Positions 3,558 through 37,480 of a stretch of DNA of 64,000 bases are shown here, piece by piece. The translations under genes and the position numbers were made by a program. The DNA comes from Ruditapes philippinarum. Its lineage: Eukaryota. Location of the stretch: positions 124,001-188,000 of the forward strand of contig NW_026867305.1 in NCBI RefSeq assembly GCF_026571515.1. The letters run 5' to 3'. The notes below the pieces were generated by a model, which was given only the letters and a program-made list of their open reading frames with translations, had not been told where the DNA came from and searched no databases. Position 1 is the stretch's first letter, and every line of letters starts with the position of its first letter.

Positions 3558-4633
3558 CAAGTTGTCATTATTGATTATTTGATATTATGTGTCCTAAATT
3601 ATTCATTCTTTCTATATTTTATCAACTTTAAAAAAAAATCTTCGATGAACATTGTTGTTTTTTTTCCTATACTGTATTATTTATCATATGATGGGCTGGT
3701 GGCCTGAAGCATTTTGTAAATTAAAGTTGAATAACTGAGTTACATTTCTATGTTTACATTTATCTTAAAGCATGAAAGTATTTTTAAACATAATATTGAT
3801 GACACAAAATAATAGTGAATCGGGTAGAATTGGGTTATTTGTATTATTATATAGATACTGCAATGATAATTAACCTAATATACAGCTCAAATTTTGACCA
3901 AAGTGTTACTGCATTCGATGTAGCTATTAAAAGCACCATAGAAATAAGTGAAATTAAAAAAAATAGGGTTTTTGACCGTTTTGAATAACGCAATGTCATC
4001 TAAAGCACGACAAGTTCGTAAAAACGAAAATACATTAAAATTAATCTTTTTAAGAGTTATATATCTTTTATGTAAACATGAAAACGGTTAGTTGGATAAA
4101 CAACTTATTAAAATACCTTTCATCAAGTCTCTATTTCTGATAATACCCTTTAAATTTGAAAAACATGTAAAACTTGTAATTTTAAGTATTTGATAAACTA
4201 TGTGTATGCGAGAAAATAAGATGATTTTAGAGGTATGTTAATGGATTAAGGTCACAGTTATTCAAATACTATCGGGTTTTGTTTATGTATTATTATACCT
4301 AAAATTATTAATGCGTTCACTGGCTGACTTGTTATTATATACTGTCAGTGAATGTGAAATTTATTAATTGATTTAACCCTGACATAAAGATATTTCAGTC
4401 AGGATATACATTTTGTATAAAACAATTTATGGCGGTTTTGATATTGTACGATTGTAATTTAACATTAAACCTGTCGGAATTGCAGTCAATTAAGTCAGCC
4501 TGTATATCTTAAGTTGATAATGGACTGTTCCAAAATCTGGAAGCTGGACAAGTCCATTCAATAAATTCAGGAGGTTTAGGGTTGATTGTCAACATTAGGA
4601 AGATAACACGAAGATCGTATTCAATTAGTCATT

Positions 4634-4770
4634 TGAGCCGCGTCACGACAAAACCAACATAATGGGTTTGCGACCAGCATGGATCCAGACCAGCCTGCGC
4701 ATCCGCGCAGTCTGATCAGGATCCATGCTGTTCGCTATCAGTTTCTCTACATGTAATAGGGTTGGTAAGC
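4634..4770. mobile_element. Truncated copy of palindromic MITE (family of 11931-12154)
   Basis: TGAGCCGCGTCACGACAAAACCAACATAATGGGTTTGCGACCAGCATGGATCC is near-identical to the left arm at 11931. The right arm is absent. Confidence 0.8.
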
Positions 4771-6280: not shown

Positions 6281-9200
6281 ATGAAGACAACAAACAAGTC
6301 GGATATCAAAGATCAAGTTCGGCAAAGGCGTAGTACTTCGGACAAACCGAAAGTGTCTGAGGAGGAATTTCGTTCAGAAAAATATAGCAAAACGAAACCA
6401 AGGGCTTCAAATGGAGTGGAAACAAGTAAATCAACGGGTTCAATACCAAAATATATTAAGATTACCTGTTTAGTTTTTACGGTTATTGTTATTTTAGCAT
6501 TCACTGCAAACACGAAGGGCGTAACAGAGAATTTTGAGTACATAAGAAGCGTGCTTACAGGTAAAAATGTTTTTATTAATATCTTGCCAAGCATTATATA
6601 TGGTCTTGTCCATCTTTCAATTAAATTATGACCATTTATCATTTGTAAGAAAAATTTCAGAAGTAGTGAACAGACTGTGCAGATTATGATCCTTGTCTGC
6701 ACTGGTCGCATTGTTAGGACCTATTACCAACGGCATGTCTGCACTGGTCGAATTGTTAAGATCTATTACCAAGGGCTGGTCTGCACTGGTCGCAAAGTTA
6801 GGATCTGTTACCAAGGGCTGGTCTGCACTGGTCGCATAGTTACAATCTGTTACCAATGGCGTGTCTGCACTGGTCGTATAGTAAAGATCTATTACCAAGG
6901 GCTTGTCTGCACTGGTCGCATAGTTAGAATCTTTTACCAAGGGCTTGACAGTACGGGTCTTATAGTTAGGATCTATTACAAAGGGCTTGTCTGCAAGGGT
7001 GGCATAGTTTGAATCTGTTACCAAGGGCTTGTCTGCACTGGTTGCATAGTTAGAATCTGTTACCAAGGGCTTGTCTGCACTGGTCGCATAGTTAGGATCT
7101 GTTACCAAGGGCTTGTCTGCACTGGTCGTATAGTTAGAATCTGTTACCAAGGGCTTGTCTGCACTGGTCGCATAGTTAGGATCTGTTACCAAGGGCTTGT
7201 CTGCACTGGTCGCATTGTTAGGATCTGTAACCAAGGACTGGTCTGCACTGGTCGCATAGTAAGGATCTGTTACCAAGGGCTTGTCTGCACGGGTTGCATA
7301 GTTAGGATCTGTTACCAAGGGCTGGTCTGCACGGGTCGTATAGTTAGGATCTGTTACCATGTGCTTGTCCACACTTGAAGACCGAGGGCTTGTCTGCACT
7401 GGTCGCATTGTTAGGATCTATTACCGAGGCCTTGTCTGCACTGGTCGCATAGTAAGGATCTGTTACAAAGGACTTGTCTGCACTGGTCGCATTGCTAGGA
7501 TCTGTTACCAAGGGCTGGTCTGCACTGGTCGTTTAGTTAGGATCTATTACCACTATTTCCAAAGACTTGTATGCACTGGTCGCATTGTTAGGATCTGTTA
7601 CCAATGGCTGGTCTGCACTGGTCGTATAGTAAGGATCTATTACCACTATTACCAAAGACTTGTCTGCACTTGTCGCATTGTTAGGATCTATTACCAAGGG
7701 CTTGTTTGCACTGATTGCATAGTTATGATCTGTTACCAAGGACTTGTCTGCACTGGTCGCATAGTAAGGATCTGTTACCAAGGACTTGTCTGCACTGGTC
7801 GCGTTGTTAGGATCTGTTACCACGGACTTGTCTGCACTGGTTGCATTGTTAGGATCTGTTACCAAGGACTTGTCTGCACTGGTTGCATTGTTTGGATCTG
7901 TTACCAAGGGCTGGTCTGCACTGGTCGTATAGTTAGGATCTATTACCACTATTACCAAAGACTTGTCTGCACTTGTCGCATTGTTTGGATCTATTACCAA
8001 GGACTTGTTTGCACTGGTCGCATTGTTAGGATCTGTTACCAAAGACTTGTCTGCACTTGTCGCATTGTAAGGATCTATTACCAAGAACTTGTCTGCACTG
8101 GTCGCATTGTTAGGATCTGTTACCAAGGACTTGTCTGCACTGGTCGCATTGTTTGGATCTGTTACCAAGGGCTGGTCTGCACTGGTCGTATAGTTAGGAT
8201 CTATTACCACTATTACCAAAGACTTGTCTGCACTTGTCGCATTGTTTGGATCTATTACCAAGGACTTGTTTGCACTGGTCGCATTGTTAGGATCTGTTAC
8301 CAAAGACTTGTCTGCACTTGTCGCATTGTTAGGATCTATTACCAAGGACTTGTCTGCACTGGTCGCATTGTTAGGATCTGTTACCAAGGGCTTGTCTGCA
8401 CTTGTCGCATTGTTAGGATCTGTTACCAAGGGCTGGTCTGCACTGGTCGCATTGTTAGGATCTATTACCAAGGGCTTGTCTGCACTGGTCGCATTGTTAG
8501 GATCTGTTACCAAGGGCTGGTCTGCACTTGTCGCATTGTTAGGATCTATTACCAAGGACTTGTCTGCACTGGTCGCATTGTTAGGATCTATTACCAAGGG
8601 CTTGTCTGCACTGGTCGCATTGTTAGGATCTGTTACCACGGACTTGTCTGCACTGGTCGCGTTGTTAGGATCTGTTACCAAGGGCTTGTTTGCACTGGTC
8701 GCATTGTTAGGATCTGTTACCAAGGGCTGGTCTGCACTGGTCGCATTGTAAGGATCTGTTACCAAGGACTTGTCTGCACTGGTCGCATTGTTAGGATCTG
8801 TTACCAAGGGTTGGTCTGCACTGGTCGTATAGTTAGGATCTATTACCACTATTACCAAAGACTTGTCTGCACTTGTCGCATTGTTAAGATCTATTACCAA
8901 GGACTTGTCTGCACTTGTCGCATTGTTAGGATCTATTACCAAGGACTTGTCTGCACTGGTCGCATTGTTAGGATCTATTACCAAGGACTTGTCTGCACTT
9001 GTCGCATTGTTAGGATCTATTACCAAGGACTTGTCTGCACTGGTCGCATTGTTAGGATCTGTAACCAAGGACTTGTCTGCACTTGTCGCGTTGTTAGGAT
9101 CGGTTACCACGGACTTGTCTGCACTGGACGCATTGTTAGGATCTATTACCAAGGGCTTGTTTGCACTGGGCGCATAGATAGGATCTATTACCAAGGGCTT

Positions 9201-10654
9201 GTCTGCACTGGTCGCATAGTTAGGATCTGTTACCAAGAGCTTGTCTGCACTGGTCGCATAGTTAGAATCTGTTACCAAGGGCTGGTCTGCACTGGTCGCA
9301 TAGTTAGGATCTGTTACCAAGGGCTGGTCTGCACTGGTCGCATAGTTAGGATCTGTTACCAAGAGCTTGTCTGCACTGGTCGCATAGTTAGGATCTGTTA
9401 CCAAGAGCTTGTCTGCACTGGTCGCATAGTTAGGATCTGTAACCAAGGACTTGTCTGCACTTGTCGCGTTGTTAGGATCTGTTACCACGGACTTGTCTGC
9501 ACTGGTCGCATAGTTAGGATCTGTTACCAAGAGCTTGACTGCACTGGTCGCATAGTTAGGATCTGTTACCAAGAGCTTGTCTGCACTGGTCGTATAGTTT
9601 GGATCTGTTACCAAGAGCTTGTCTGCGCTGGTCGTATAGTTAAGATCTGTTACCAAGGGCTTGAGCAGCTTTGAATTTCCAACAATCCATTGTTAATATG
9701 AGGGTTTAAAATCAAAATATTGAAAAACAAACAGTTTAGAGTCTGGTCAGACTATAAAGACGTGTTATCTGGTCGGACTCGTCAAAAAGCTATCACTGAG
9801 AAGTCTAGTTTCTAAAGGTCTTTCATTCAGTTACCATCTATAGATATTTTGGAAATGATTGTGGAAAATGTGTGTTGATTTTTCGACAACATTAAGGTGA
9901 TTTTTAAAATCTTAATAAATCCTATTTTTAATGAAATGAGCTAGTAAACTTTAATGCATTTGTGTCAATAGAAAACAATAGTAAAATTGAAACAATAATT
10001 AAATTTATAGCTTACGAAATGTGGGTTTTTTCAGGCAAAGACGACTGTTTAAGTTATCCATGCATTAACGGTGGAGAGTGTGTCGATAAGATAGGAGGCT
10101 ATGAGTGTTCATGTAAGGAATGGTACACCGGGAAAAACTGCGAGACTTGTAAGTTTGTTACACCTATATCAGTGATCCTAGACTAAGAGTTTATCAACAT
10201 CTCTGTTTCTTTTATTATTCGAAATATTCTTGCTATTGCGAAAAATGTTAATCGGACAATTTTAGAAAGTTAAAATTCAACAACAAAAAATAATGTACAT
10301 TTTGTATCTAGATTTTTAATAAATTCCTGATTGAATCAATTTTTAAGTCTCATTTTCCCCCCTTAAATATGTCTCTATGAGCCTCTTCTAATGCAATGAC
10401 GTTACAATTGGGGATATATATGGATGTGTCTTTCTTTGTTTCTTTCTTCGTTTCTTTCTTTCTTCTTTTCTCTCTCCAGTGATATACTGTAATGATATGC
10501 TTTATCGTATTTCTATTTTTATATAGGTATTCCGTGTGTAAATCATCAGTGTAAAAACGGAGCATATTGCGTTCCACAACGTGACGGAAGTTACCGCTGT
10601 TCATGTCCACCTCACATTGCTGGAAGATTCTGTGAAATTAACGAAAGATACTGA
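6281..10654 (+). CDS. Gene A: type II membrane protein with two EGF-like domains (~173 aa, 3 exons)
   Basis: Exons 6281-6560 (charged tail + [18 protein letters not shown]), 10035-10148 ([38 protein letters not shown]) and 10527-10654 ([42 protein letters not shown]). All junctions are GT-AG, phase 1, total 522 nt. The EGF exon sizes (114, 128) equal those of paralog B1. Confidence 0.85.
6690..9663. repeat. 42-bp minisatellite (~70 units) in intron 1 of gene A
   Basis: Unit ~CCAAGGGCTTGTCTGCACTGGTCGCATAGTTAGGATCTGTTA. It explains the 14-aa periodic ORFs on both strands. A recurrent 9-bp insertion marks higher-order units. Confidence 0.97.
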
Positions 10655-10865: not shown

Positions 10866-11592
10866 CCTCCACTTTATTTAGCAAATGAATTTGTGAAAAT
10901 AGCTATAGACAATGAGAGTAATTCACCTTATTTAACTAGTGCATTTGTGAAATTTTCCATTAACAATGAAAGTTCTTCACTTTATTTAGCTAGTGAACTT
11001 GTGAAAGTATCTATTGACAATGAAAGTACTTCATTTTATTTATCTAGTGAACTTGTGAAAGTATCTATTGACAATAAAAGTATTTCACTTTATTTAGCTA
11101 GTGAACTTGTGAAATTATCCATTGACAATAAAAGTACTTCACTTTATTTAGCTAGTGAATTTGTGAAATTATCCATTGACAATGAAAGTACTTCACTTTA
11201 TTTAGCTAGTGAACTTGTGAAAGTATCTATTGACAATGAAAGTACTTCACTTTATTTAGCTAGTGAACTTGTGAAGTTATCTATTGACAATGAAAGTACT
11301 TCACTTTATTTAGCTAGTGAACTTGTGAAATTATCTATTGACAATGAAAGTACTTCACTTTATTTAGCTAGTGAACTTGTGAAAGTATCCATTGACAATG
11401 AAAGTACTTCACTTTATTAAGCTAGTTAACTTGTGATAGTATCTATTTGCAATGAAAGTACTTCACTTTATTTAGCTAGTGTATTTATGAAATTATCAAT
11501 TGACAATGAAAGTACTTCACTTTATTAAGCTAGTGAATTTATGAAATTATCCATTGACAATGAAAGTACTTCACTTTACTTAGCTAGTGTAT
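10866..11592. repeat. 54-bp minisatellite (~13 units) 3' of gene A
   Basis: Unit TTATTTAGCTAGTGAACTTGTGAAATTATCCATTGACAATGAAAGTACTTCACT. It explains the 18-aa periodic ORF at 10713-11420. Confidence 0.95.
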
Positions 11593-11930
11593 TTGTTTGT
11601 TATATTCATTGTGAGAATTGTAATTTATGAATATATGTTTTGTTAATTTGTTGATATTTGTATGACGATGTATACGTGCACAAGTCCAAAAAAATAATAA
11701 CAAAAAGTATCTTCTCTTTATTTTTTTCTTTTGTGCGTAAATATTGATTAGTTTGAAAGCGGCAATGCATAAAATGTGGAAACTATAAACACACTGCCAG
11801 AAAATCATACTAGTTAAAGATATATATTTTAATTGTTTCGAAAATGTACGGATATGCAATTAAAGAAGCTAGTTTAACAACATTTTAAACTCATAACGTA
11901 TCATCAATTCAGTAAATGAATTAACATAAT

Positions 11931-12154: not shown

Positions 12155-12696
12155 ATTATTATTTTTAAGGCAAATTATGCCTCAGAAACATATGATTTTT
12201 TACATCTTCTTCTTCAGGAAGGAGAAACATAAATTTATAAACGTTTAGATATGGGTTTAATAATGGTTTTTATTGACAGGTAGTAACAAGACAAAAAAAC
12301 ATTCACTTTAACCAAAGTATCCCATGTAAGTAAGGTCATATGTAATGTGAAATGGCATTGAGCGGAAGGACTAATTTTTTATTCGAAATTACGTTGATTG
12401 TGTGACATTTAAAGTGTTTCTTTGATGCACCTGTTGCATTTATAACTCTCTCATCTTGAGAAAATATAACAAATGAAAGTTTGAAAACATATGCTTTACT
12501 TATATAGAAATAAAGGCAGATTAAAAACTAAATAGAATTTGTTTAAACTTTGAATGAGCTTAGATCAAAAGCAATTGTGGAAATATGACAACAGTTACTG
12601 TATACAACACCACACTTTTACACTGCTGGAACCGAAAGGTAAATTACCAGGAAAGCCAGGCTACACATCCGTGCAAACTGAATCTGCGCTGTACGT

Positions 12697-12950
12697 TTGG
12701 CTACTGTACTTTTGGCTACAGTACTTATGGCTACTGTACTTATGGCTACAGTACTTATGGCTACTGTACTTATGGCTACAGTACTTATGGCTACTGTACT
12801 TTTGGCTACTGTACTTATGGCTACTGTACTTATGGCTACTGTACTTATGGCTACAGTACTTATGGCTACTGTACTTTTGGCTACTGTATTTATGGCTACT
12901 GTACTTATGGCAACTGTACTTTTGGCTACTGTACTTATGGCAACTGTACT
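12697..12950. repeat. 15-bp minisatellite (GGCTACTGTACTTAT)~17
   Basis: Direct inspection. It is stop-free in all three + frames. Confidence 0.95.
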
Positions 12951-20458: not shown

Positions 20459-23400
20459 ATGAAACAAGAGAGGGACACGACGCGTTTAGGATACGTTGGA
20501 AATATTCACCATCGGGGGAACACCGACGACGACGAAGAATTTAAAAGAACGTACGCGTCGGAGCTGACTTTGTCAGAGAAATATGGCAAGACGATACAGC
20601 AAACTTCAACAACTGAGAAAACAGTCAAAGTAACCGCTTCAAAGGTACAAGAAGGAGAAAAAACCTACTCATTTACCACTTCATTATGGGTAATTGGATT
20701 TGTCGCCACTTTAGCCGTCTTTACTGGCTCAAAAATTGGAAGAGAAAATATAAAGAGAGTGATAACAGGTATTTACTTTATCATCATATGAAATTTTCAA
20801 ATTTTAAGATTTTTGAAAATACTTTATTTGAGATAATATACATGCTGAATAGGTCTTTTGTAGCGAGTTTAATTTTACTCATCTTCAATAACAGTTTATA
20901 CCTGATAAATCGATAAATGCCAGCCATTTTCCTTCTCGCTACGCTAGGTTGCACACGAACAGTGTTTGTTGACATATCTTTTATACCATTAAAGCAGCGT
21001 GCATGTAGATTCATTGTTTTTTATAGCAAAATATTGAGAAAGTATTTAAAATGGTAAAAATTTAGTAAAGATTAATTAAGGGTTGACTTTTATTATCCTA
21101 GCTCTCTTAAAAATTACAGAACTTAAAATAATACAAAATAAAATGAATAAATAAAAAGCGAAACTAGCCCTTACTCTATTCAGTAAAGGGTAGGTGAAAT
21201 GATAAGTTAATTGTTCGCATATTGCTTAAAACGTTCAAATTTAAAACTTAAAAACTTCAAATTATTTAAAGGAACGTTATTTCTTGTACATATCCTAAAC
21301 TTTTTATAAACTTCTTTTAAAAATTGGTATATCTCCGAAACTGGAGGCTTTAATGATTAATATGACAATACCGTAGCTCAATAAAACTCATTCTAAACAA
21401 AAGTTTATCATAGTTATTTAACGTTTAATCGATCAATTGTATACATTAAATACAAAGGTAGAGTGCTTTTGTTTATAACTATCAAAACAGTGTAGCTATG
21501 TCTGTAATTCGATCGATTTGAATATTGATTGATTAGATTTATACAAATCAATTCTATTTATAGAACACATTGATCGCTCCTAACCATGTATGAAATGTTT
21601 ACATCCCATAGCTTACTGTTGTACCGTCTTGACTCTTTATCATATCTACATGTATGTTGTTCAATTTCATTTAGGATGAAATCATTTTTAAATGATTAAT
21701 TGAGAAATGGTCAAATTTTCATGAATATCGCAGAGAGAAAAAAGCAGCAATTGTCCATTCTCAATGTTTCATTTCAATCGGATCACTTGAGTTTTTCGCA
21801 TTTACATACGGAAATTTCCGAAATTTTACGAGTAGGACTAAAGTTTTTGCATTCAATTTCTATGACAGATTGCCGGGAACCAGGATCTATACCTTATGGT
21901 TCTATCGTTGTAAATGAGGAAGAAGGAACAAAATATGGAGCAAAAGCAACTGTCGTCTGCTCACACGGATACTCGAGTTCAAATCCGGAAGCTGTATGCC
22001 AAGCGAACGGAAAATGGTCGTCTGTATATTGTCACGTGACTGGTAGGTATAGTCTTTCAATATTTCCAAAATTGTTAATTTATATTACTGCATTTTGATA
22101 TTTAGATATTTTAAGACAGATAACATTGTCATTATCAAATATAAGACTTTTTTTGCCTTGTCAGCTACTCTTTGCTGTGTTACAAAGAAACGAATCTGCA
22201 CATGTATTATATATTTCATAATTATACATAATAATCAATTATACATTTTTAAGATTGTGGAAACACTTTACCACAAATCGAAAACGGACAATCAACAATG
22301 AATAGTGAGCAAGATTCTACGTTTGGTGCAACAGCCACCGTTACTTGTGCCCCCGGATATCAGCGAAATAAACCTAAGATTTCATGTCAGGCTGACGGGA
22401 TGTGGGAACAAGCGACATGCCAGCCAGTTGGTAAGTCTTCCATTGAACTTGAGTCTTATTTTTAATTCGATAAAGCCTGCTTACACCGGTGTGGAATGGA
22501 GACGACATGGGGTGAATGGCAGTTCGAAATTGCTCATGTCAACCATAACCATGTTTTATGAACTGGCACTTGCAAATATTTTCAGTTTAACCATGCCAGG
22601 ACAAAGTTTCTATTTTGACATATTTCAGGCAAACTTTTGCATTAGACTTTTCTTAGATTATAGAAATAATAAAATTCATGTATGAAAACAAACAACTTAT
22701 TGTAGGCAGTGTCAATCATAAAACAATTACCCATAATAAGAACTGATATAGAAATATATAGATATAATTTTATGTATATTTAACCATATTTCAGACATAT
22801 TCATTATCTAAAGGATCGTTGCACCGAAATTGTGTCCGTAACGTTCATTGAAACTATTCAAGTTTTAAACATAATGTTTTCCTTTTAGTTAGATTCGATT
22901 ATGTCATGACGTCATTGCGCTTATTCACATAATTATAAATTATAATACTTTTTCAATCTTTCTTCCCAATACGAGTTGATGTTGATGTTGTATTTCAGAC
23001 TGCAGTAATCCAAAGATTGAACATGGTCATCTTGAGTGGGACAGCACATTGTTTTTGTCACAGGCTACTGTGAAATGTGACACTGGTTACGCACCGAGTC
23101 AACCACATGTCACATGTACAGCTTCCGGTACATGGCAGAATGCTGTATGCTACAGTAAGTCTTAATTTGATATGTCCATTAACACCGTGTATATCCAATA
23201 ACGCTGGAATGTGAAAATAACGATTTGTGCAAAAAGTAACGCAGAATTGTGCAATAATAATAATTTACAGAAACTTACTTTAAGGATCTTACACCGGCTG
23301 CCAGTACAGACCGGAACATCTAGCTCGAGGGTAACTGAGTTTTCGCTGAAACCTGAGAGCTAGATATTCCGGTCTGTACCGGCAGCCGGTGTTTGATTTT

Positions 23401-29149: not shown

Positions 29150-29151
29150 TT

Positions 29152-29184
<33 letters not shown>

Positions 29185-32100
29185 TTTTTAAAATCTCATT
29201 CTCAAGTAAAGAACAAAGACATGAAGCCCCGTTTATCATTGTGTGGCGGCCGTCACCTTTGGTCGGAATAGTCAGCTTGATAAAGTCCTTTTGTAAATAT
29301 GCTTCAACCAGACGCTCCGTATATTCCTGTAAAATAGATAAATAAGCATGAATTTATGACGTATTTATTTTATTTGCAATATTTAATTTTATTTGCAATA
29401 TTTAAGAAATAAGCGCAACAGATATATAGAAGAATATAGCTTTCAAATAAATCTAAGTATTTGTAAATGATGTCAGCTGATGGTTTTTGGTATCTTGTCT
29501 ATGAACAAAAAAAAAACTATTGGGAACTGAATACATCTTAACCCGGTGCTAGGGTGTGCTTTAACACTATCTGTCACTCAAAAAAGTGAGTCTACGATTT
29601 TTTTTTCAACTGTTTACTTTTTGTCCTTATTGCTCTCCCTCGAATGATGGCTATTTTCAAGAGTTTCTTTTACGCAAGATCTAGAATGATTTAAATAAAA
29701 TTAGCATAATGAATAATCATACTAGTCATGCTATTTTTGAAACTACAAGAAAATACAAATAACAAGGAACACATAAAACTTACAACGTCCGTCTCTCCTG
29801 GACACATGTATTTCGTCAGAGATTTTAGAAGCTGACATCGTCGCACAAAAACGTCCTGGAAAATGTAAACATGGACACAATTAAGCAGTAGGTTTTCCTA
29901 TGTATAATTTGAAAGTCGCTTTAATGACATTAAAGCAATACCATATTTATAATATTTGAAGCACACGATGGACAACTTGCATTTAAATTGGTTGACGAAT
30001 AGAAAAAAAAAATGAAAAGAAATATGTATACTCAACCTGGCATGGCTTTCGGTCAAAACGGACAATGTTCAAATGCTGCAAGTGGTAGACTGTTAAGATA
30101 ATAATAATGAGGTTAATGTTTCATTGTATTGAGGGAGCAATGCAAACTAAATCAAGACGATTGGCTATCTTTGCATAAAAACTTTGCAAGCAGAGGACAT
30201 ATCATGATTGTTGTGAGGACTAATTGAGGGCTAATGTTGCTTTGTTTTAATGCATCAATATCTGCAGAATCACGAGTACGCATTTTAAAGCCCGATCCCA
30301 CAGGGCAATAGATGTTTAGAGTCAGAGGGTTTTTACTGATGTAAATGCTCATAAAGATGCATAAGCACTATTCTTGCATAAATCATACGTCCGAATTGGG
30401 TTTTCTCGTTTCGTCATTTGTATTTGTATAAATTTTTGCTTGACTCAGGGCGCAAATTTAAAACAGCTTAATAGAATGATCGCCCGGTAGTTTCATTTTC
30501 AAAGCATAACGTAATCAAATGACGTCGTACAAGCAGGTGCTAAGCATCGAACAAGCAATGGGTTCTTTGAATGCAGCCATCGCAGATGGGAGAATTATCA
30601 AAAGGGTTAAAGTGTCTACTTCTCAAAGAATAAAAGGCCCGAGTCCTTCAATTGACTCCGGTGCGTTTCATGTTAGCTTTAACAGTTCAATTTTTGTCAA
30701 AACAAATATTATTTCACCAAATTAAACACACAAATTCATGGAATAGAGTCTGGATAAGTGTATACTAGTACTTGTTACAAAGTGACAGTCTGGGACAATA
30801 TTTATTTTTATTTCCTTTTTTTTCTAATAACTGACTTTGATATTCCAGTGTCAAAATCATCAAATTATGACTCTAATAAAAGGATACATCGTCTTGAAAG
30901 AGTACAAAATATTTGTCGTCTCTCATTGTCTCTCTATTAATTCTGTTCCAAAGTTTCTCGTTCAGCTCTTCTTTTGCCTGTAACATAAATTATCGTTTTC
31001 ATAAATGTCATAAACAGTAGACCTTTCATCAACGTCGATATTTGTCAACATATATATAATCAAAGCACAGAATTTGTTTGGGTCTCGGAATATCAGAAAG
31101 GTAATGATTGTGAGATTATAAACTAATTTGTTTTTGTGTAGTGCCAGCAATGCTGTTTCCATTGTTATAACTGTAGTAAATTGGCTATAAGGCTAATTGC
31201 AACACTTATTTTCAATTCAATGTTTATTTGGCTAAAATAATTAAAAAAAACAACAAAAACAACAAGATGATTTCCTTTAACTAGGATTTGAACCGCAGAC
31301 CTCTTGCTTCCTAAACGAGCGTGTAACCCTGGACCACGGGCAAGTTATAAGAAAACAAACCACAGTATTCTAAATTACTGTTTGTAATCCTTATTAATTT
31401 TGAATGAAATTGATTATCGATTGTCGACTGCCTGAAGTCGTCCCTGTCCTAGAGTCAATATCCTTACTTTATTTTGTCCGAAAGTCTAAATAACAAATGT
31501 TTATTTAGGCGTTCAAATAATCCGAAGCTTTACGGTAATAGCCGGGCAATTTTCATTGATTTAAAAGATATTCATCCGCTTAACAATATTATTTGAATAT
31601 ATTTCCGGTTATTTGCGGAAATGTTAAAGAATCATACAATATTAGAAATTTTCAACTTATCGGGAACTATATTTTCTTCCCTGAGAAGGTTTGAAAATTA
31701 ATGCACCTGTCATTTGACAATCTTTACGCAGTGATCTCCCCTTAATTTGTCGGCGTTAGTGTACTTATAAAGGGAAAATACCGCTTCGAGGAGTTCATGA
31801 CGGACTACTTACGGATTTTGCAAATAAGCATATCAGGGTCTGAAATTTCGCTACCATTATTTGTTTTGTCTGACGACCCAAACAAATAAAAATCAAATAT
31901 GCTGAAAACACAAATTGAGACATTTATTTTTCATTTTATTTCATATATTTATATGTTCAAGATATGTCCAAAGTTGAAACTTCAATCTTAAGGTTGCTTT
32001 CTTTTTCATTTACAGCTCTTATTTTATAACAAACTAAAATGTGTGTTAAGCATCAACAAAATTACTGAAAATGTTATGCTTTAAACTGCAGTCCGTAATA

Positions 32101-34523
32101 CCATTTTATGTTTGATAAATACACAGTAATTTCATGTTGATCATCTACAAACATATTTACCTTTTCTTCATATGAATGTGTAAATCCTTTCCATTTCTCG
32201 AAACGGAACAATTTGCCACAACCATCAATTGCAATTAAACAAAGCCAAAAGATTATATTTACAAAAATGCCTCTTGCTATAAAACCGTTGGTATTTAACC
32301 ATCCAGAATTATCCATTTCTCTACCAAAACTGAAGGAAACGTAGGTAAATTCCAAACCAACAGTTATTAGACTCAGAATAAAGAATACAAGTGTTGTATA
32401 TCTGGTAAGATGTATTAGTATGTGTTTGTATTTAACAGGGAACGAGTTGCTGACAATGGCTTCCATTTCATCAAACCTCGCATCTGAGACCTACAAAAAG
32501 GTTTATCAAATTACACTTTTTCACAAATATCTTTTTGACGAAATATACAACACGTCTAAGTTTTTTAGTGTAAAATGATGTTGTGTTAACAAACATTGAC
32601 AATAGTACAAATATTTTGTCATTTCATTTATAAATATCTGAAAAAGTGATCCCTCGGAAGCATTTAAAACAGCATAATGACATGGAAATTGCAGATTCGT
32701 TTTGATTGAGTCTCTACATGAGGAATTTAAATTTATTCATAATTCATTGAAATCAGTTTCTTTCAACTACTAGTTTATTAATCTGGATATTTAGAATCCT
32801 AGTATGAAATGTCTAAGACCATTCGTCCATCTTAAATTTAAGAGATTCACAAGAAGCAAATAAGATCTGGAAAAAAGATGTTCTTTGCTTAAGTAACAAT
32901 GAAATTGAATTAAATGAGTTGCCAAAAGGTTTGCCATTTGTTGCTATATGACACAAAAACAATAAGAGCAAACGATCACGACCCGTAAATGATTTATCAA
33001 AATCAACTTACAACAAAGCCATTTCTCCTGAGAGACATTCTTTCTTTTTTGTCAATCAGTAATTTGAATCTTGATACTGTAGTCCATTTGCACCCTTCTT
33101 TATATTGTGTCATTGACATGCGTCGAGTTAAGCCATTTGTATCTATTATATAATGTAATAACGAGTATTCTCACGTTGATTTAAACCATTACAGATTTAA
33201 AGTATAAATAGTAAAATTAAAAACGCTACTGCCGAGCTTGATTTTATAATTTTATTTTATACTTATATTTCTGAAAAACAAAAGCCATTTGTATCTATAA
33301 TATAATGTAAAATAAAGAGTATTCTTCACTTTAATTTAAACCATGTCAGATTTAAAGTAGTAATACAGAATTAAAAACGTTACTAGCTTGAATTATTATT
33401 ATATATTCTGATAACAATGGTAATATTTATGAAAAACAATTAAATATATCATACACTAAGAAAACTACTTACTGTTGTGTTCCACGTGCCAAACTGTTTA
33501 AGATAAAAAAAAGTTTCAGCACCAAGTTATTGTAATATTTCTTAAGTTGAATCTTATTATAGCATACTTCATACTTTAATGTCTGTGTGAACAGGCTTAT
33601 TTCCTTCTAAACATTTTCTATACCCTATTTCGTATACTGGAATTTATATGGTTTATATGACACATTCTGGTGAAAGAATTTTAAATACTCAGAGGCATGT
33701 TAATGTATACATACATATTATTAACATCTATGAAGTAGATTCATAACAATGTGTAGTTTTTAACATGGTATTGCAAAACGAATACAAAAGCTAGTGCAAC
33801 AGAGTTTGTAATAACATAATTATAGAGTTTGTAATAGAATCTTAAAGCAATTATTGTGTTTTGCTATGCTTTAACACATAACAATATATATTAAGTGTAT
33901 GACTATACATGCTTTCTACACTATCGGACTAAATATAAAATAATATAAATATAGTAATGTTCTTGTACTTTCTTTCATTATAAAACATTAGAATCTTGTG
34001 GAAAAAATGAAATCTTACCGTCTTGTAAAAATGCATTTAGGATTAGTTTATGAACTTCTATCGTTTCTATGTTTTGAGCATCAATGTATGTTGTTGTTTT
34101 CAGATTATCAGGAATATCGCATGGCTCGATCTTGATAGGTATGATTGTGTAGTCATCTGTTATTCTTGTATGAACCGCTTGGTGAATTTCATGCTGACAG
34201 AAGCTACTGTTAACTGATTCTTCCGAAAGAATAATGATGATGCCCATGCTCCGTTTTATAGCAGAATTGATGTTATGGAAAACATTTTGACCAGGTTGAA
34301 AGTCACGCTCATGATAACAGCATTTTAATCCCTCGCCTTCCAAATTTTCAACAATTACTCGAACATCGGCTGAATTGTAGTCAGTATAGCAAACAAACAG
34401 ATGATAGTCTTTTGTATTAGGTAAGTCTGGAATGTTATGGTTTCTTGAAAATGTATCCGAATCACTTTCCGTCAGTAAACACATTGATTCCATATCACCG
34501 GGTTCACTCATTCTCGAAAACAT
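29150..34523 (-). CDS. TIR-domain, two-TM protein with TMEM268-like C-terminal part (~447 aa, 7 exons)
   Basis: Exons 34523-34019 (TIR: YHLFVCY, CYHERDFQPG, IIILSEESVNSSFCQHE, IIPIKIEPCDIP), 33142-33012, 32490-32161 (two TMs), 30977-30888, 30075-30037, 29855-29784 and 29326-29150 (RHTMINGASCLCSLLE..D10*). All junctions are GT-AG with phases 1,0,0,0,0,0, 1344 nt open. Confidence 0.85.
30076..30887 (-). other. U12-type (minor spliceosome) GT-AG intron
   Basis: Donor GAT|GTATCCTTTT. Branch-like TCTTAAC ends 16 nt before the 3' splice junction. No polypyrimidine tract. Confidence 0.75.
31280..31340 (-). mobile_element. Degenerate tRNA-derived SINE head
   Basis: Minus strand reads CCCGTGGTCCAGGGTTACACGCTCG...GGTTCAAATCCTAG (box A/box B-like), without a clean cloverleaf. 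Confidence 0.45.
31700..31893 (-). mobile_element. Interspersed repeat with terminal hairpin (Helentron/HINE-like), inverted copy at 46598-46800
   Basis: TTATTTGTTTTGTCTGACGACCCAAACAAATAA hairpin and adjacent sequence match the reverse complement of the 46.6-kb insertion. Confidence 0.55.
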
Positions 34524-34815
34524 TCTAAAGTTTTTGTTTTTTTTATTTTCGACAAAATGTCTTTATATTGACGTCGACTCAGGTTTGAATAAAAGTCGTA
34601 GTTTGTTAAATATATTTCCAATTTTATCGATTACAAAGGAATTGTAATCAATATTAAAAAAATCGTACGCGTTCCTTTGTTGATTATGTATTTGAATTAC
34701 ACGGTTGAATAAAATGACAGATCCCTAAAGAATAAACCGATATCTTGTACAATTGTATTGTGCTTTACACATATTTTGGATTACGTTTTACTGATCATAA
34801 ATAGATACAAGAAAT
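34524..34815. promoter_or_regulatory. Putative bidirectional promoter/5'UTRs between divergent genes
   Basis: 292 bp separate the ATG at 34523 (-) from the ATG at 34816 (+). CRE-like TGACGTC at ~34569. Confidence 0.55.
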
Positions 34816-37480
34816 ATGGAGACGTATAAAATCAAACGTTTTACCGGTTTAATACAGTATGTTGCAGCAATCACCTTTCTTTTGTGCGGGGTAAGCCGGT
34901 CAAATTTTATTATTGTGTTACTTTTTAATTTGAAATGAAAAGCGGTATCATTTCGTGTTTTGTTTTAAATTACTGAATACATACTAACTAAAGTGTTATC
35001 GTTATATTTGCAGATTGAATGTCAATTTCCCTGTACATCACCCGGTATTTGTCCAAGACATAAACCATACTGCACAACAAGTGGGTGTGTTTTCGAATGT
35101 CCAAACTCAGCGTATATTAATGGAACGGAATGTGTTGCTGAGTGCGGAAATAATCTTGTTTTTAATAAAACATGTGTGGATCATTGCCCTACAAATATGA
35201 TGTTAAGAGAGACATCAAAGCTTCTTGGAAGAGAAATCTACATTACCAAACTATGCGTGACTATGTGTGATCACCATGAATATATTTATAATGGCACATG
35301 CGTTAAAGCATGTCCGGTGACGCATAAATACATTCACGGGAATAATTGTACAACGTCCTGTCCACAAATGACGACATTTATAAAGAATATAACAGTTTAT
35401 GGCATTTCCTTTTATAAATGTGTTAAGGAGTGTGAATATCTAATTGAGGATGGTTACTGCACCGATGACTGTGTTCCAAACAAATATGTCTTTAATTCGA
35501 GTTGCATAAGCCAGTGTCCAACTTCACATCCATTTATATATAATCAGCATTGTGAGCAAACGTGTCCTTATTCGACAGTTACGTCTGGAAATAACACTTG
35601 CTTGTTTAGATGTCCCTTAGATGTTCCTTATATTTTCAATAACAGTTGTGTTGATATTTGTCCAGACGATAGCGCATATATTGTGACAGAAGATGGAAGA
35701 TTGCATTGCATCCAAGAATGTCCACTAATGACGTATCATTACAATTCAACATGTGTTGAAAAGTGCCCAAATGGAACGTTTATTGAAGACAGAACATGTA
35801 ATAACAAATGCCCAAACGATCGTCCGTACATATGCACCTTTTCAAAACAAAAATTACTTGTATTTGACAGTAAATTTTTTAAATATTTTCCCAACCGATA
35901 GTTGGGTTTCCCAAATCCCCAAAAAATACGTATTCTCTCGGTATGACTTGCTTGTCCACTTGCCCTTCTGGTTATAAATATTTAAATGCGACATGTGTTC
36001 AAGGATGTCCTCATGACTTTCCATTCTCTTACGATTACACTGCAAAGGCAAAGTATGGTTTGAATAATATCTTTACAAGGATCAAAATAGAGCCAACATG
36101 TACAAGAAGTTGTCCTGATAACCTTTATCAAGTGAACCATACTTGCCAGCCATTTTGTCCTGATGGGCTTTACACTGTTGACAAAACATGTGAGGCGGCT
36201 TGTCCAAAATTGAAAGAGTTTAAACGTCACAGGAGTATTTCATTTGAGAAATATGACGTTGTAAGCGATACTTGGAATTATTCTTGGAAAAGAGAAACTA
36301 AACAAGCAGAAATTGTTGAATGTGTGACTGCATGCAGTCACAATGAGTCGATTTTTAACTCCACATGCATTGAAACATGCCCAATATATACAATGTCCGT
36401 AAATAAATCATGTCTTTCAGAATGCCCAGAATACTTCCTATTTATCATTCAGCGTACAAAAGGCGTGAAATGTTCAGCTTCTCAAAAGTGTGAAGGTGTG
36501 TATCGATACTCGGAGTGCCTACGTGAATGTCCACCAGGTTCTTATCAATTTAACTCCACATGTGTAGATGCTTGTCCAGATTCTACATTTACAGTTGGCA
36601 ATTCGTGTGCGGCTAGTTGTCCTGAATATCAACGATTTCTTCTCAAAAGTGAAAGAACAGTTACTCAGTGGAGACAAGGATGGGACAAAAAATGGTCAAA
36701 AATAAGCCGAAGATTAAATGCAGGTTATTTGTGTTTAGAATTTTGTCCGTCTGATAAAAAGGTCCATAATTTGACTTGTATGGACCATTGTCCGAAGAAG
36801 TCATTTGTGAATGGTAATGAATGCGTATATGAGTGTCCACCAGAAAGTCCTTTGGAATACACAGATAATGAAACATGGGCATGTATTCGTTCTTGTGATG
36901 ATGAGTATAAAACTTTCTATTATAATGGATCGTGTCATTATTCGTGCACAGCTCCTCTCATTGAATATGATGGTTTTTGTCTTGAGAAATGTCCACCTGG
37001 ATTTTTATGGTTTAATGAGTGCACCAGGAGAATTGATGTTGTAATCATATCTGCACTCATTCTTGGAATCAGCATCATCATACTGGCTTTTGGGAGAAAT
37101 GTTGTTAAAGAATATGGTATTGTTCTATGCGAGAGTATGAGTTATTATCTAACGGTAAGTCGTATTAGAAGTATATACTACACTTTCATTTTCCTTTTGA
37201 TCACAAAATTCAGACATACATAAAATGGCTATATTGTTTCAATTGAACTATTATTAACAATTATCATAGTATTTTATATTAATTTCATATATAATTTCAG
37301 TGTAAAACCAAAGATAAGTACACAATAAAGGACCGTTATGGTAAAAGTAGAAATGACTGTCAAATGCCGGAAACAATTGAGATACAGAGATGTGATGGTA
37401 TTGAAATGGACCAAATAACAAACTCGAACTCAAACCTTATTGACTTTGAACAGCCGTTACATGAAGAAACAAATGTTTAG
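34816..37480 (+). CDS. Type I membrane protein of furin-like (PCSK5-like/growth-factor-receptor) Cys-rich repeats, ~800 aa, with an apparent frameshift at ~35850-35930
   Basis: Exon 34816-34890 is a signal peptide (METYKIKRFTGLIQYVAAITFLLCG|GTAAG). Exon 35014-37154 has many CxxxCP..NxTC repeats, then TM VVIISALILGISIIILAF. Exon 37301-37480 is a cytoplasmic tail ending HEETNV*. Junctions are phase 0. No protease domain. Confidence 0.8.

What the first reader, a model, noticed from the sequence alone, without database searches (positions are those of the whole stretch)
29150..37480. Head-to-head receptor + membrane TIR effector pair: a candidate split Toll-like sensor/executor module
Seen: two genes diverge with only 292 bp between ATGs in an otherwise gene-sparse, repeat-rich window. 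One has a large Cys-rich ectodomain and a TM but no signalling domain. The other has a cytosolic TIR and two TMs but almost no ectodomain (~13-aa loop), so the architectures are complementary. Established: divergently transcribed sensor/executor pairs exist for plant NLRs (RRS1/RPS4, RGA4/RGA5), and TLRs join an ectodomain and TIR in one chain. Inference: these co-regulated proteins may assemble in the membrane into a two-component immune receptor. I know of no description of this pairing in animals, but I could not search for one.
Basis: partly seen in the sequence, partly recalled or inferred. Interest (0 to 1): 0.85.

Follow-up and report, generated by a model that had tools for sequence, protein, structure and literature searches.

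The report
Paired clam TIR and receptor genes
In the Manila clam, a gene for a membrane-anchored Toll-type signalling (TIR) protein sits back-to-back with a gene for a cysteine-rich surface receptor, and this pair recurs at all 19 related places examined in the genome, so it looks like a split immune receptor, although this window's receptor copy is broken by a frameshift.

Summary
Two genes diverge from a 292-bp spacer (ATGs at 34523 and 34816).

- **Minus strand:** an intact 8-exon, 454-codon gene. It encodes an N-terminal TLR-type TIR, a two-helix membrane hairpin and a cytosolic C-terminal region.
- **Plus strand:** signal peptide, furin-like Cys-rich ectodomain, one TM helix and a roughly 80-residue tail with no recognised domain. 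As assembled, its reading frame breaks between 35883 and 35898. Intact paralogs read straight through this point. RefSeq annotates only the second half (XP_060578602.1).

The main result is genome-wide. The genome is Ruditapes philippinarum.

- All 13 receptor-family loci lie beside a TIR-hairpin gene.
- All 19 TIR-hairpin loci examined have a Cys-rich membrane partner: 17 divergent, 2 tandem. Six partners are a short ectodomain form.
- The TIR and receptor trees share 6 of 10 splits. Label shuffles never reached 6 in 20,000 trials.
- Nothing else is shared between the loci.

The unit is therefore an old, co-duplicating two-gene cassette. It most likely works as a split Toll-like sensor and transducer, as in Hydra HyLRR/HyTRR. 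Physical association, co-expression and synteny in other species could not be tested, because the tools for reads and for foreign contigs were unavailable. No fused form was seen.

The parts
34019..34523 (-). TIR gene exon 1: start codon, short N-terminal stretch and TIR domain (Pfam match residues 43-151, about 34071-34397). Donor G|GTAAG, ends in phase 1.
   Evidence: TIR_2 9e-20, TIR 1.9e-16. Closest solved TIRs are TLR15/2/1/6/10.
33473..33493 (-). TIR gene exon 2: a 21-nt mini-exon (..WHVEHN..).
   Evidence: It matches the 'VWHVEQ' stretch of the paralog's RefSeq protein P0004. AG/GT borders and phase fit.
33012..33142 (-). TIR gene exon 3: linker between the TIR and the membrane hairpin.
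   Evidence: tblastn with P0004 (E 1e-7) and with Mya arenaria homologs. Borders and phase fit.
32161..32490 (-). TIR gene exon 4: two-helix membrane hairpin. TM1 is about 32332-32400 and TM2 about 32215-32271, with a loop of 13-20 residues.
   Evidence: Hydropathy. Homologous exon found at 5 other loci. Colinear with Mya arenaria P0015/P0017/P0018.
30888..30977 (-). TIR gene exon 5. It is followed by an intron with a U12-type donor, GTATCCTTT.
   Evidence: Also shared with locus L006 by tblastx.
30037..30075 (-). TIR gene exon 6 (HLNIVRFDRKPCQ). It is preceded by a TCTTAAC branch-site-like motif at 30092-30098.
   Evidence: It resembles 'IMRYNFNPC' of the Mya homologs, judged by eye.
29784..29855 (-). 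TIR gene exon 7.
   Evidence: Weak tblastn match to P0016 (E 0.71), plus AG/GT borders and phase. This is the least certain exon.
29150..29326 (-). TIR gene exon 8: conserved C-terminal motif (RHxMxNGAxCxC), a run of ten Asp, then the stop codon.
   Evidence: tblastn with Mya P0015/P0016/P0021/P0024, E 1e-5 to 9e-8. Borders.
34524..34815 (.). Shared 292-bp spacer between the two start codons. It is a presumed bidirectional promoter; this is inferred, not shown.
   Evidence: Partial sequence conservation with the three closest paralogous spacers.
34816..34890 (+). Receptor exon 1: start codon and hydrophobic signal peptide. Donor GTAAGC, phase 0.
   Evidence: The exon and its donor are conserved in the three closest paralogs.
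35014..37154 (+). Receptor main exon. It encodes the N-terminal cap motif (CPxxKPYC..GCVFECP), furin-like Cys-rich repeats, a membrane-proximal module, the TM helix and the start of the tail. It reads in two frames as assembled.
   Evidence: The second half is identical to RefSeq XP_060578602.1.
35883..35898 (+). Interval that must contain the frame break of the receptor (a single shift between frames).
   Evidence: Stops in the two frames bound the interval. Paralogs L001, L002 and L003 read through the homologous stretch in one frame.
37038..37091 (+). Receptor transmembrane helix (VVIISALILGISIIILAF).
   Evidence: Hydropathy.
37301..37480 (+). Receptor last exon: cytoplasmic tail without a recognisable domain, then the stop codon.
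   Evidence: It matches the C-terminus of XP_060578602.1 exactly. Pfam finds nothing in that protein.

Best explanation
The region holds one copy of a conserved two-gene cassette of the Manila clam.

Gene A encodes a cytosolic, TLR-type TIR domain. A two-helix hairpin holds it at a membrane, and a conserved cytosolic C-terminal region follows. Gene B is transcribed the other way from a short shared spacer. It encodes a type I membrane protein. Its ectodomain is a variable stack of furin-like Cys-rich repeats between a conserved N-terminal cap and a conserved membrane-proximal module, and its tail has no recognised domain.

Shown:
- the two architectures;
- the adjacency at every family locus in this genome;
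- co-duplication of the two genes as a unit;
- faster divergence and large length variation of the ectodomain;
- the frame break in this window's copy of gene B.

Inferred: the two proteins are made together and associate in the membrane. Gene B would bind a ligand outside the cell. Gene A would supply the TIR platform that recruits MyD88-type adaptors. This would be a split Toll-like receptor with a non-LRR ectodomain.

In this window gene A looks intact. Gene B is either a young pseudogene or carries an assembly or haplotype indel.
For: Architecture:
- Pfam TIR_2/TIR and Furin-like matches.
- An 8-exon model with consistent phases, 454 codons, colinear with the 416-438-residue Mya arenaria proteins.
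- TM helices by hydropathy.
- The TIR is closest to the TLR15/2/1/6/10 TIRs, E 1.5e-16 to 1e-9, and keeps the RDFxPG BB-loop.

Pairing:
- The TIR search and the receptor searches hit the same contigs.
- A profile search of the whole genome finds exactly 13 receptor loci, and each lies beside a TIR-hairpin gene.
- Six further TIR loci have a divergent short Cys-rich membrane partner 1.3-3.9 kb away.
- Tally: 19 of 19 loci paired, 17 divergent and 2 tandem.

Co-duplication:
- The trees share 6 of 10 splits. The maximum was 5 in 20,000 label shuffles.
- Only these two genes are shared between loci of different clades.

Sensor-like evolution:
- Receptor end branches are about 2-4 times longer than TIR branches for the deep copies.
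- Ectodomains range from about 100 to about 1000 residues.

Other species and precedent:
- Both families exist in Mya arenaria with the same architectures and on the same 64-Mb chromosome.
- Hydra's split TLR is a precedent (PMC6321704).
Against:
Mya accession numbers place the partners only in the same neighbourhood or chromosome.
- None of 152 receptor-like proteins from other samples carries a TIR, so there is no fused 'Rosetta stone' form.
- Adjacency of old duplicates can persist without selection when spacers are short.
- Five of 13 long receptors (this window, C9149, C14087a, C7726, C4757) are broken as assembled. The cassette therefore decays often, or the assembly has indel errors.
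- The receptor tail and the hairpin show no recognisable interaction motif.
Confidence: 0.5

Rival explanations
1. The two genes are co-regulated neighbours and nothing more. They share a bidirectional promoter, so both are induced together, for instance in immune cells. Their proteins act independently and do not form a receptor complex.
For: Spacers are short (292-870 bp) in the four closest copies, with some conserved blocks. No interaction motif or fused form was found.
Against: In most older copies the two genes lie 1.3-14 kb apart, and in two copies they are tandem, yet they stay together. A shared core promoter therefore cannot be the only thing that keeps them linked. The complementary architectures, an ectodomain without signalling domain beside a TIR without ectodomain, would be a coincidence repeated across 19 loci.
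Confidence: 0.2
2. The linkage is historical only. An ancestral neighbouring pair was copied as a block again and again, and too few breakpoints have fallen in the short spacers to separate the genes. On this view there is no selection for adjacency.
For: The congruent trees are what block duplication alone predicts. Many copies are decaying.
Against: No solo receptor exists anywhere in 1.4 Gb, and no TIR-hairpin locus examined lacks a partner. Yet divergence is deep, with TIR identity down to about 33% and branch lengths above 1 change per site. Transposon-like insertions have entered at least one spacer. One clade has changed relative orientation while keeping adjacency. The duplicated unit is trimmed to exactly these two genes.
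Confidence: 0.15
3. The Cys-rich protein is not the sensor. It is an accessory of the TIR-hairpin protein, such as a trafficking chaperone, stabiliser or inhibitor or decoy. Mammalian TMEM268 offers a parallel: it binds and stabilises single-pass integrin subunits.
For: A protein-language-model search places the non-TIR part of the Mya homolog nearest TMEM268/DUF4481 clusters (score 0.80, 185 of 256 features). TMEM268 interacts with ITGB4 and supports CD11b signalling (PMC6748091, PMC11169502).
Against: Pfam DUF4481 does not match any exon or any full-length homolog, and a score of 0.80 is only a lead. Variation of the ectodomain from about 100 to about 1000 residues, together with fast divergence, fits ligand recognition better than a housekeeping accessory.
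Confidence: 0.15
4. For this window only: the receptor copy is a pseudogene, so the pair here is half dead, whatever the family does.
For: There is one frame shift relative to three intact paralogs. Two Cys of the repeat spanning the break have been lost. RefSeq models only the second half, which has no signal peptide.
Against: A 446-codon frame stays open after the break, and the Cys pattern elsewhere is kept. The shift is therefore recent, or an indel error or haplotype variant in a T/C-run.
Confidence: 0.5

Closest known systems
Hydra bipartite Toll-like receptor (HyLRR-2 with HyTRR-1/2)
   Same: Recognition and TIR signalling are split between two separate membrane proteins. One has only an ectodomain, and the other has a TIR and almost no ectodomain (PMC6321704). 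The clam TIR also matches the solved Hydra 'Toll-receptor-related 2' TIR (4w8g/4w8h, E 1.5e-8).
   Different: The Hydra ectodomain is LRR, while the clam one is furin-like Cys-rich repeats. From my own recall, not checked here, HyTRR is single-pass with a C-terminal TIR. The clam protein has an N-terminal TIR followed by a two-helix hairpin and a further cytosolic region. No head-to-head gene arrangement or multi-copy cassette is known to me for Hydra.
Plant head-to-head paired NLRs (RRS1/RPS4, RGA5/RGA4)
   Same: These are divergently transcribed immune gene pairs that duplicate and evolve as units with a division of labour. One search lists a head-to-head TIR-NBS-LRR pair in melon (PMC10883720).
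   Different: They are cytosolic NLRs, not membrane proteins. They have no NB-ARC or LRR equivalent here, and they belong to a different kingdom. The likeness is one of genome logic only.
Canonical Toll-like receptors
   Same: The TIR sequence is closest to the TLR1/2/6/10/15 TIRs with an intact BB-loop. The overall logic is a variable repeat ectodomain with N- and C-terminal caps, a membrane anchor and a TIR.
   Different: Here there are two polypeptides from two genes, no LRR, and the TIR lies N-terminal to its membrane anchor. The same genome has many ordinary single-exon TLR genes (open frames of 700-950 residues).
Furin-like Cys-rich repeat proteins (RefSeq label 'proprotein convertase subtilisin/kexin type 5-like')
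   Same: The repeats match Pfam Furin-like PF00757.
   Different: There is no protease or P domain, so the RefSeq name reflects the repeats only. The family has its own N-terminal cap and membrane-proximal module, one TM helix and a short tail.
TMEM268 (DUF4481)
   Same: TMEM268 is a two-TM protein with cytosolic flanks that binds single-pass receptors (PMC6748091, PMC11169502). It is the nearest cluster by language-model features.
   Different: There is no HMM-level similarity, and TMEM268 has no TIR. The relationship is unproven.

Membership tests
TIR domain superfamily (Pfam PF13676 / PF01582) | Profile match above the curated cut-off | tested here: met
   TIR_2 71.8 bits (cut-off 28) and TIR 60.8 bits (cut-off 21.3).
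TIR domain superfamily (Pfam PF13676 / PF01582) | BB-loop motif RDxxPG of receptor/adaptor-type TIRs | tested here: met
   'HERDFQPG' aligns with the same motif of TLR15/TLR2 and TLR1.
Canonical Toll-like receptor | LRR ectodomain, one TM helix and C-terminal TIR in one chain | tested here: not met
   There is no LRR match. The TIR and the ectodomain are on opposite strands, and the TIR precedes two TM helices.
Furin-like Cys-rich repeat proteins (PF00757) | Profile match above the cut-off | tested here: met
   First half of the window receptor: 38.9 bits (cut-off 26.8). Intact paralogs: 57-60 bits. The second half alone gives no match.
Proprotein convertase PCSK5 (the RefSeq name) | Subtilisin-like catalytic domain and P domain | tested here: not met
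   Pfam finds only Furin-like repeats or nothing in the window pieces, the paralogs and XP_060578602.1.
Hydra-type split TLR | Ectodomain-only and TIR-only membrane proteins encoded separately | tested here: met
Hydra-type split TLR | LRR ectodomain partner | tested here: not met
   The ectodomain consists of furin-like repeats.
Hydra-type split TLR | The two proteins act together in signalling | not testable with these tools
   This needs co-expression and interaction assays.
Paired head-to-head immune receptor genes (plant NLR type) | Divergent arrangement conserved across paralogs, with co-duplication | tested here: met
   17 of 19 loci are divergent. The trees are congruent.
Paired head-to-head immune receptor genes (plant NLR type) | NB-ARC/LRR architecture | tested here: not met
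   No such domains were found.
TMEM268 / DUF4481 | Match to PF14800 | tested here: not met
   There is no match for the window exons, the whole genome or the full-length Mya homologs. The only support is a language-model lead of 0.80.
NAD-cleaving TIRs (SARM1 / bacterial / plant type) | Catalytic glutamate in an NAD pocket, and enzymatic activity | not tested
   A Glu in 'CQHE' aligns with 'CQYE' of the TLR15/TLR2 chain (7ylf), and TLR1 has 'CHYE' at the same place. This residue does not discriminate. Bacterial AbTIR is only a weak hit (E 8e-4).

The most novel reading that the evidence does not exclude
Imparidentian bivalves have an unrecognised class of pattern-recognition receptor. It is a genetically paired, two-chain Toll-like receptor. 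A fast-evolving furin-repeat ectodomain protein senses ligands. A dedicated TIR-hairpin protein, encoded head-to-head with it, transduces the signal. The cassette multiplies as a unit, as plant paired NLRs do.
Probability: 0.4. Interest if true: 0.85.

Novelty: new variant of a known kind. Interest (0 to 1): 0.72.

Why it matters
Animal TIR receptors are thought of as single chains with LRR or Ig ectodomains. Paired, co-duplicating sensor and transducer genes are a hallmark of plant immunity.

A multi-copy cassette in a clam that couples a non-LRR, repeat-variable ectodomain to a TLR-type TIR on a separate, genetically linked membrane protein would matter in three ways:
- It would widen the known ways of building a Toll-like receptor.
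- It would give a second, independent animal example beside Hydra.
- It would offer a tractable case of immune receptor diversification by cassette duplication in bivalves, whose TIR repertoires are large and mostly unexplained.

It also corrects an annotation. The 'PCSK5-like' proteins of clams are not proteases.

Tried and rejected
- **Short intron at the frame break.** A 32-nt GT..AG 'intron' (35870-35901) would restore the frame. I rejected it because paralogs have coding sequence of matching length there, it is implausibly short, and RefSeq does not use it.
- **TMEM268/DUF4481 membership.** Pfam finds nothing for the exons, the whole genome or the full-length Mya homologs. Only a 0.80 language-model lead remains.
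- **Fused receptor-TIR proteins.** None was found among 152 receptor-like proteins. The two same-strand loci on C14087 keep a separate TIR start and a separate hairpin exon, so they look like tandem genes, not a fusion.
- **Solo receptor on C1510.** The weak hits are a tandem-repeat artefact that is open on both strands.
- **Structure of the Mya homolog.** AlphaFold2 with 7 sequences gave mean pLDDT 47.5, too poor for a fold search, so none was run.
- **Cross-species synteny.**
  - The JGI metagenome scan found no relative.
  - Accession order in Mya is only suggestive: XP numbers are 15 apart for one pair, and WAR numbers are 50 apart for another.
- **Expression and the frame break in reads.** I did not resend it, and read laying was not used.
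- **An allele reading through the break.** The nearest foreign protein, P0009, is only 63% identical.
- **Literature.** I found no paper that describes this pairing. Gerdol et al. 2017 on bivalve TIR proteins is not in the library and could not be checked.

Full report
**What is in the window**

The genome is Ruditapes philippinarum.

On the minus strand, an ORF from the ATG at 34523 carries a TIR domain: TIR_2 at 71.8 bits and TIR at 60.8 bits. I used the 416-438-residue Mya arenaria homologs and a paralog's RefSeq protein as guides. With these I placed eight exons:
- 34523-34019
- 33493-33473
- 33142-33012
- 32490-32161
- 30977-30888
- 30075-30037
- 29855-29784
- 29326-29150

Every border is AG/GT, the phases fit, and the total is 454 codons plus stop. 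Each exon was checked on its own.

Exon 4 holds two hydrophobic helices with a short loop between them. The predicted topology is therefore TIR in the cytosol, a membrane hairpin, and a cytosolic C-terminal region that ends in a conserved RHxMxNGAxCxC motif and ten Asp.

On the plus strand, the ATG at 34816 opens a 25-codon signal-peptide exon with donor GTAAGC. The large exon 35014-37154 encodes Cys-rich repeats (Furin-like, 38.9 bits), a TM helix at 37038-37091 and the start of the tail. Exon 37301-37480 completes a domain-less tail.

The two ATGs are separated by 292 bp.

**The flaw in this copy**

The receptor's large exon reads in two frames. The upstream frame stops at 35899-35901. The downstream frame has its last stop at 35880-35882. 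The shift must therefore lie in 35883-35898.

The three closest paralogs read through the homologous stretch in one frame, with 34 codons where the window has 107 nt. They keep two Cys there that the window has lost.

RefSeq models only the part from the ATG at 35943 (XP_060578602.1, 463 residues, no signal peptide). A 446-codon frame remains open after the break. The event is therefore recent, or it is an indel error or a haplotype variant.

**The pair is a family-wide unit**

I searched the whole 1.4-Gb assembly with the TIR exon and with the two receptor pieces. All three searches hit the same contigs. I fetched the loci and mapped both genes.
- A profile of the receptor's N-terminal 320 residues (alignment A1) finds exactly 13 loci in the genome and nothing else at E below 1e-6. 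Each of them lies beside a TIR-hairpin paralog.
- Eleven of these are divergent. The gap from the TIR exon to the receptor ORF ranges from about 0.3 kb to 14 kb.
- Two, both on C14087, are tandem. There the receptor lies upstream of a TIR gene that keeps its own start and hairpin exon.
- Six more distant TIR loci, five on C15051 and one on C10585, had no receptor hit at first. Each has a divergent neighbour 1.3-3.9 kb away. That neighbour encodes a signal-like start, about 100 Cys-rich residues homologous to the membrane-proximal module of the long receptors, and a TM helix.
- The tally is 19 of 19 TIR-hairpin loci paired, 17 of them head-to-head.
- The only apparent solo receptor hit (C1510) is a tandem-repeat artefact.
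- One locus (C13220) has hairpin and C-terminal exons, but no TIR exon within the 10 kb fetched upstream.

**Co-duplication**

Maximum-likelihood trees of the 13 TIR exons and of the 13 receptor N-terminal regions give the same clades:
- {window, C15208a, C15208b, C7211}
- {C14087a, C14087b}
- {C10506, C7726, C7651, C4757}
- {C9658, C9598}
- C9149 on its own

The window copy is sister to the other three of its clade in both trees. Six of ten splits are shared. In 20,000 label shuffles the maximum was five, reached once.

A tblastx comparison of 26 kb around the window pair with loci of other clades found only the TIR-gene exons and the receptor in common. The duplicated unit is therefore these two genes and nothing more.

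Divergence is deep. TIR identity falls to about 33%, and inner branches exceed 1 change per site. Receptor end branches are about 2-4 times longer than those of their TIR partners. Ectodomain length ranges from about 100 to about 1000 residues. This asymmetry is what one expects of a sensor and a conserved transducer.

Five long receptors are broken as assembled: the window, C9149, C14087a, C7726 and C4757, the last with 13 stops. In C9149 and C14087a the TIR exon is damaged too, by a TAG and by a lost start respectively. This looks like birth-and-death turnover, although assembly errors may contribute.

**What kind of TIR and what kind of receptor**

Against solved structures, the TIR is closest to the following:
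- TLR15/TLR2, TLR1, TLR6 and TLR10 (E 1.5e-16 to 1e-9)
- the oyster TIR-STING TIR
- Hydra 'Toll-receptor-related 2'

NAD-cleaving bacterial TIRs are only weak hits in the same search. The BB-loop RDFxPG is intact. I therefore read it as a signalling TIR. Enzymatic activity was not tested and is not excluded.

The receptor family has a characteristic N-terminal cap (CPxxKP[YF]C..GCVFxCP..NG..CV..CG), repeats of the CxxxCP type, and a membrane-proximal Y[DE]GxC..CPxG[FY] module. Homologs with signal peptide, cap, TM helix and short tail occur in Mya arenaria. A Mercenaria mercenaria homolog has the signal peptide and cap, but no TM helix appears in its 662-residue model. More distant repeat proteins occur in oysters and scallops. 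The RefSeq label 'PCSK5-like' reflects the repeats only, since no protease domain is present.

**Other species**

Mya arenaria has at least seven TIR-hairpin genes and several receptor-family genes. All lie on the same 64.37-Mb chromosome. One TIR-hairpin protein (XP_052779904.1) and one receptor (XP_052779888/9.1) are 15 accession numbers apart. In R. philippinarum such numbers track position only loosely, so this is suggestive at best.

None of 152 receptor-like proteins from public data carries a TIR, so there is no fusion to prove a functional link.

**Mechanism, with what is shown and what is inferred**

Shown:
- complementary architectures
- obligate adjacency
- co-duplication
- asymmetric evolutionary rates
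- partial conservation of the shared spacer and of the signal-peptide exon in the closest paralogs

Inferred: the two genes are co-expressed from the spacer, the two proteins associate in the membrane, the ectodomain binds a ligand, and the TLR-type TIR platform recruits adaptors.

The closest animal precedent is Hydra's bipartite TLR (HyLRR plus HyTRR; PMC6321704). The genome logic resembles that of plant paired NLRs.

A protein-language-model search puts the non-TIR part nearest TMEM268/DUF4481 (0.80). TMEM268 binds single-pass integrin subunits (PMC6748091, PMC11169502). This would suit a docking role for the hairpin module. However, Pfam gives no support, and an AlphaFold2 model was too poor to use (pLDDT 47.5).

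**Verdict**

The pair is not a one-off but a conserved cassette present at least 19 times.
- I put the split-receptor mechanism at about 0.5.
- I found no description of this cassette in the searchable literature. The key bivalve TIR survey (Gerdol et al. 2017) could not be read.

Noticed in passing
window 30076-30887 (minus strand): Intron 5 of the TIR gene has a U12-type donor, GTATCCTTT, at 30879-30887. A TCTTAAC branch-site-like motif lies at 30092-30098, about 16-18 nt before the acceptor at 30076-30077. This agrees with another first-stage note on this window.
   Followed up: partly
window 29153-29182 (minus strand): The TIR-hairpin protein ends in a run of ten Asp. The Mya arenaria homologs do not have this run.
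   Followed up: no
window 6692-9663, 10870-11596, 12689-12950: Three satellite arrays with periods of 42, 54 and 15 bases. They produce long spurious ORFs on both strands.
   Followed up: partly
window 21700-22098 (+): An ORF piece has a Sushi/CCP-like Cys pattern (C..PG.I..G.......Y..G....Y.C..GY......C...G.W). It is possibly an exon of an unrelated gene. Weak Cys-rich tblastx hits lie nearby, at 20909-21034 and 22352-22501.
   Followed up: no
L003:about 4130-4700 (C7211 spacer): A roughly 500-bp insertion with long inverted-repeat-like arms (MITE-like) sits in the spacer between the paired genes. It is absent from the three other copies of the clade.
   Followed up: no
L005 and L006 (C14087:341001-364000): Two adjacent cassette copies have the receptor upstream of the TIR gene on the same strand, about 2 kb apart. 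This is the only clade that is not head-to-head. Read-through or fusion transcripts are conceivable but were not tested.
   Followed up: partly
L027:380-5626 (C13220): Hairpin, exon-5-like and last-exon-like pieces of a family member are present, but no TIR exon lies in the 10 kb fetched upstream. The contig is only 31 kb. This may be a TIR-less relative or an incomplete locus.
   Followed up: partly
L020:7308-7652 (C10585, minus strand): A second short Cys-rich partner-like ORF (about 31% identical to the first) lies some 7 kb beyond the paired one. Whether it has its own TIR partner was not checked.
   Followed up: no
P0007 (RefSeq model of the C15208a receptor): The RefSeq model of this paralog starts inside the ectodomain (587 of about 735+ residues) and ends with a second hydrophobic stretch in the tail. 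RefSeq models of this family are often partial.
   Followed up: no
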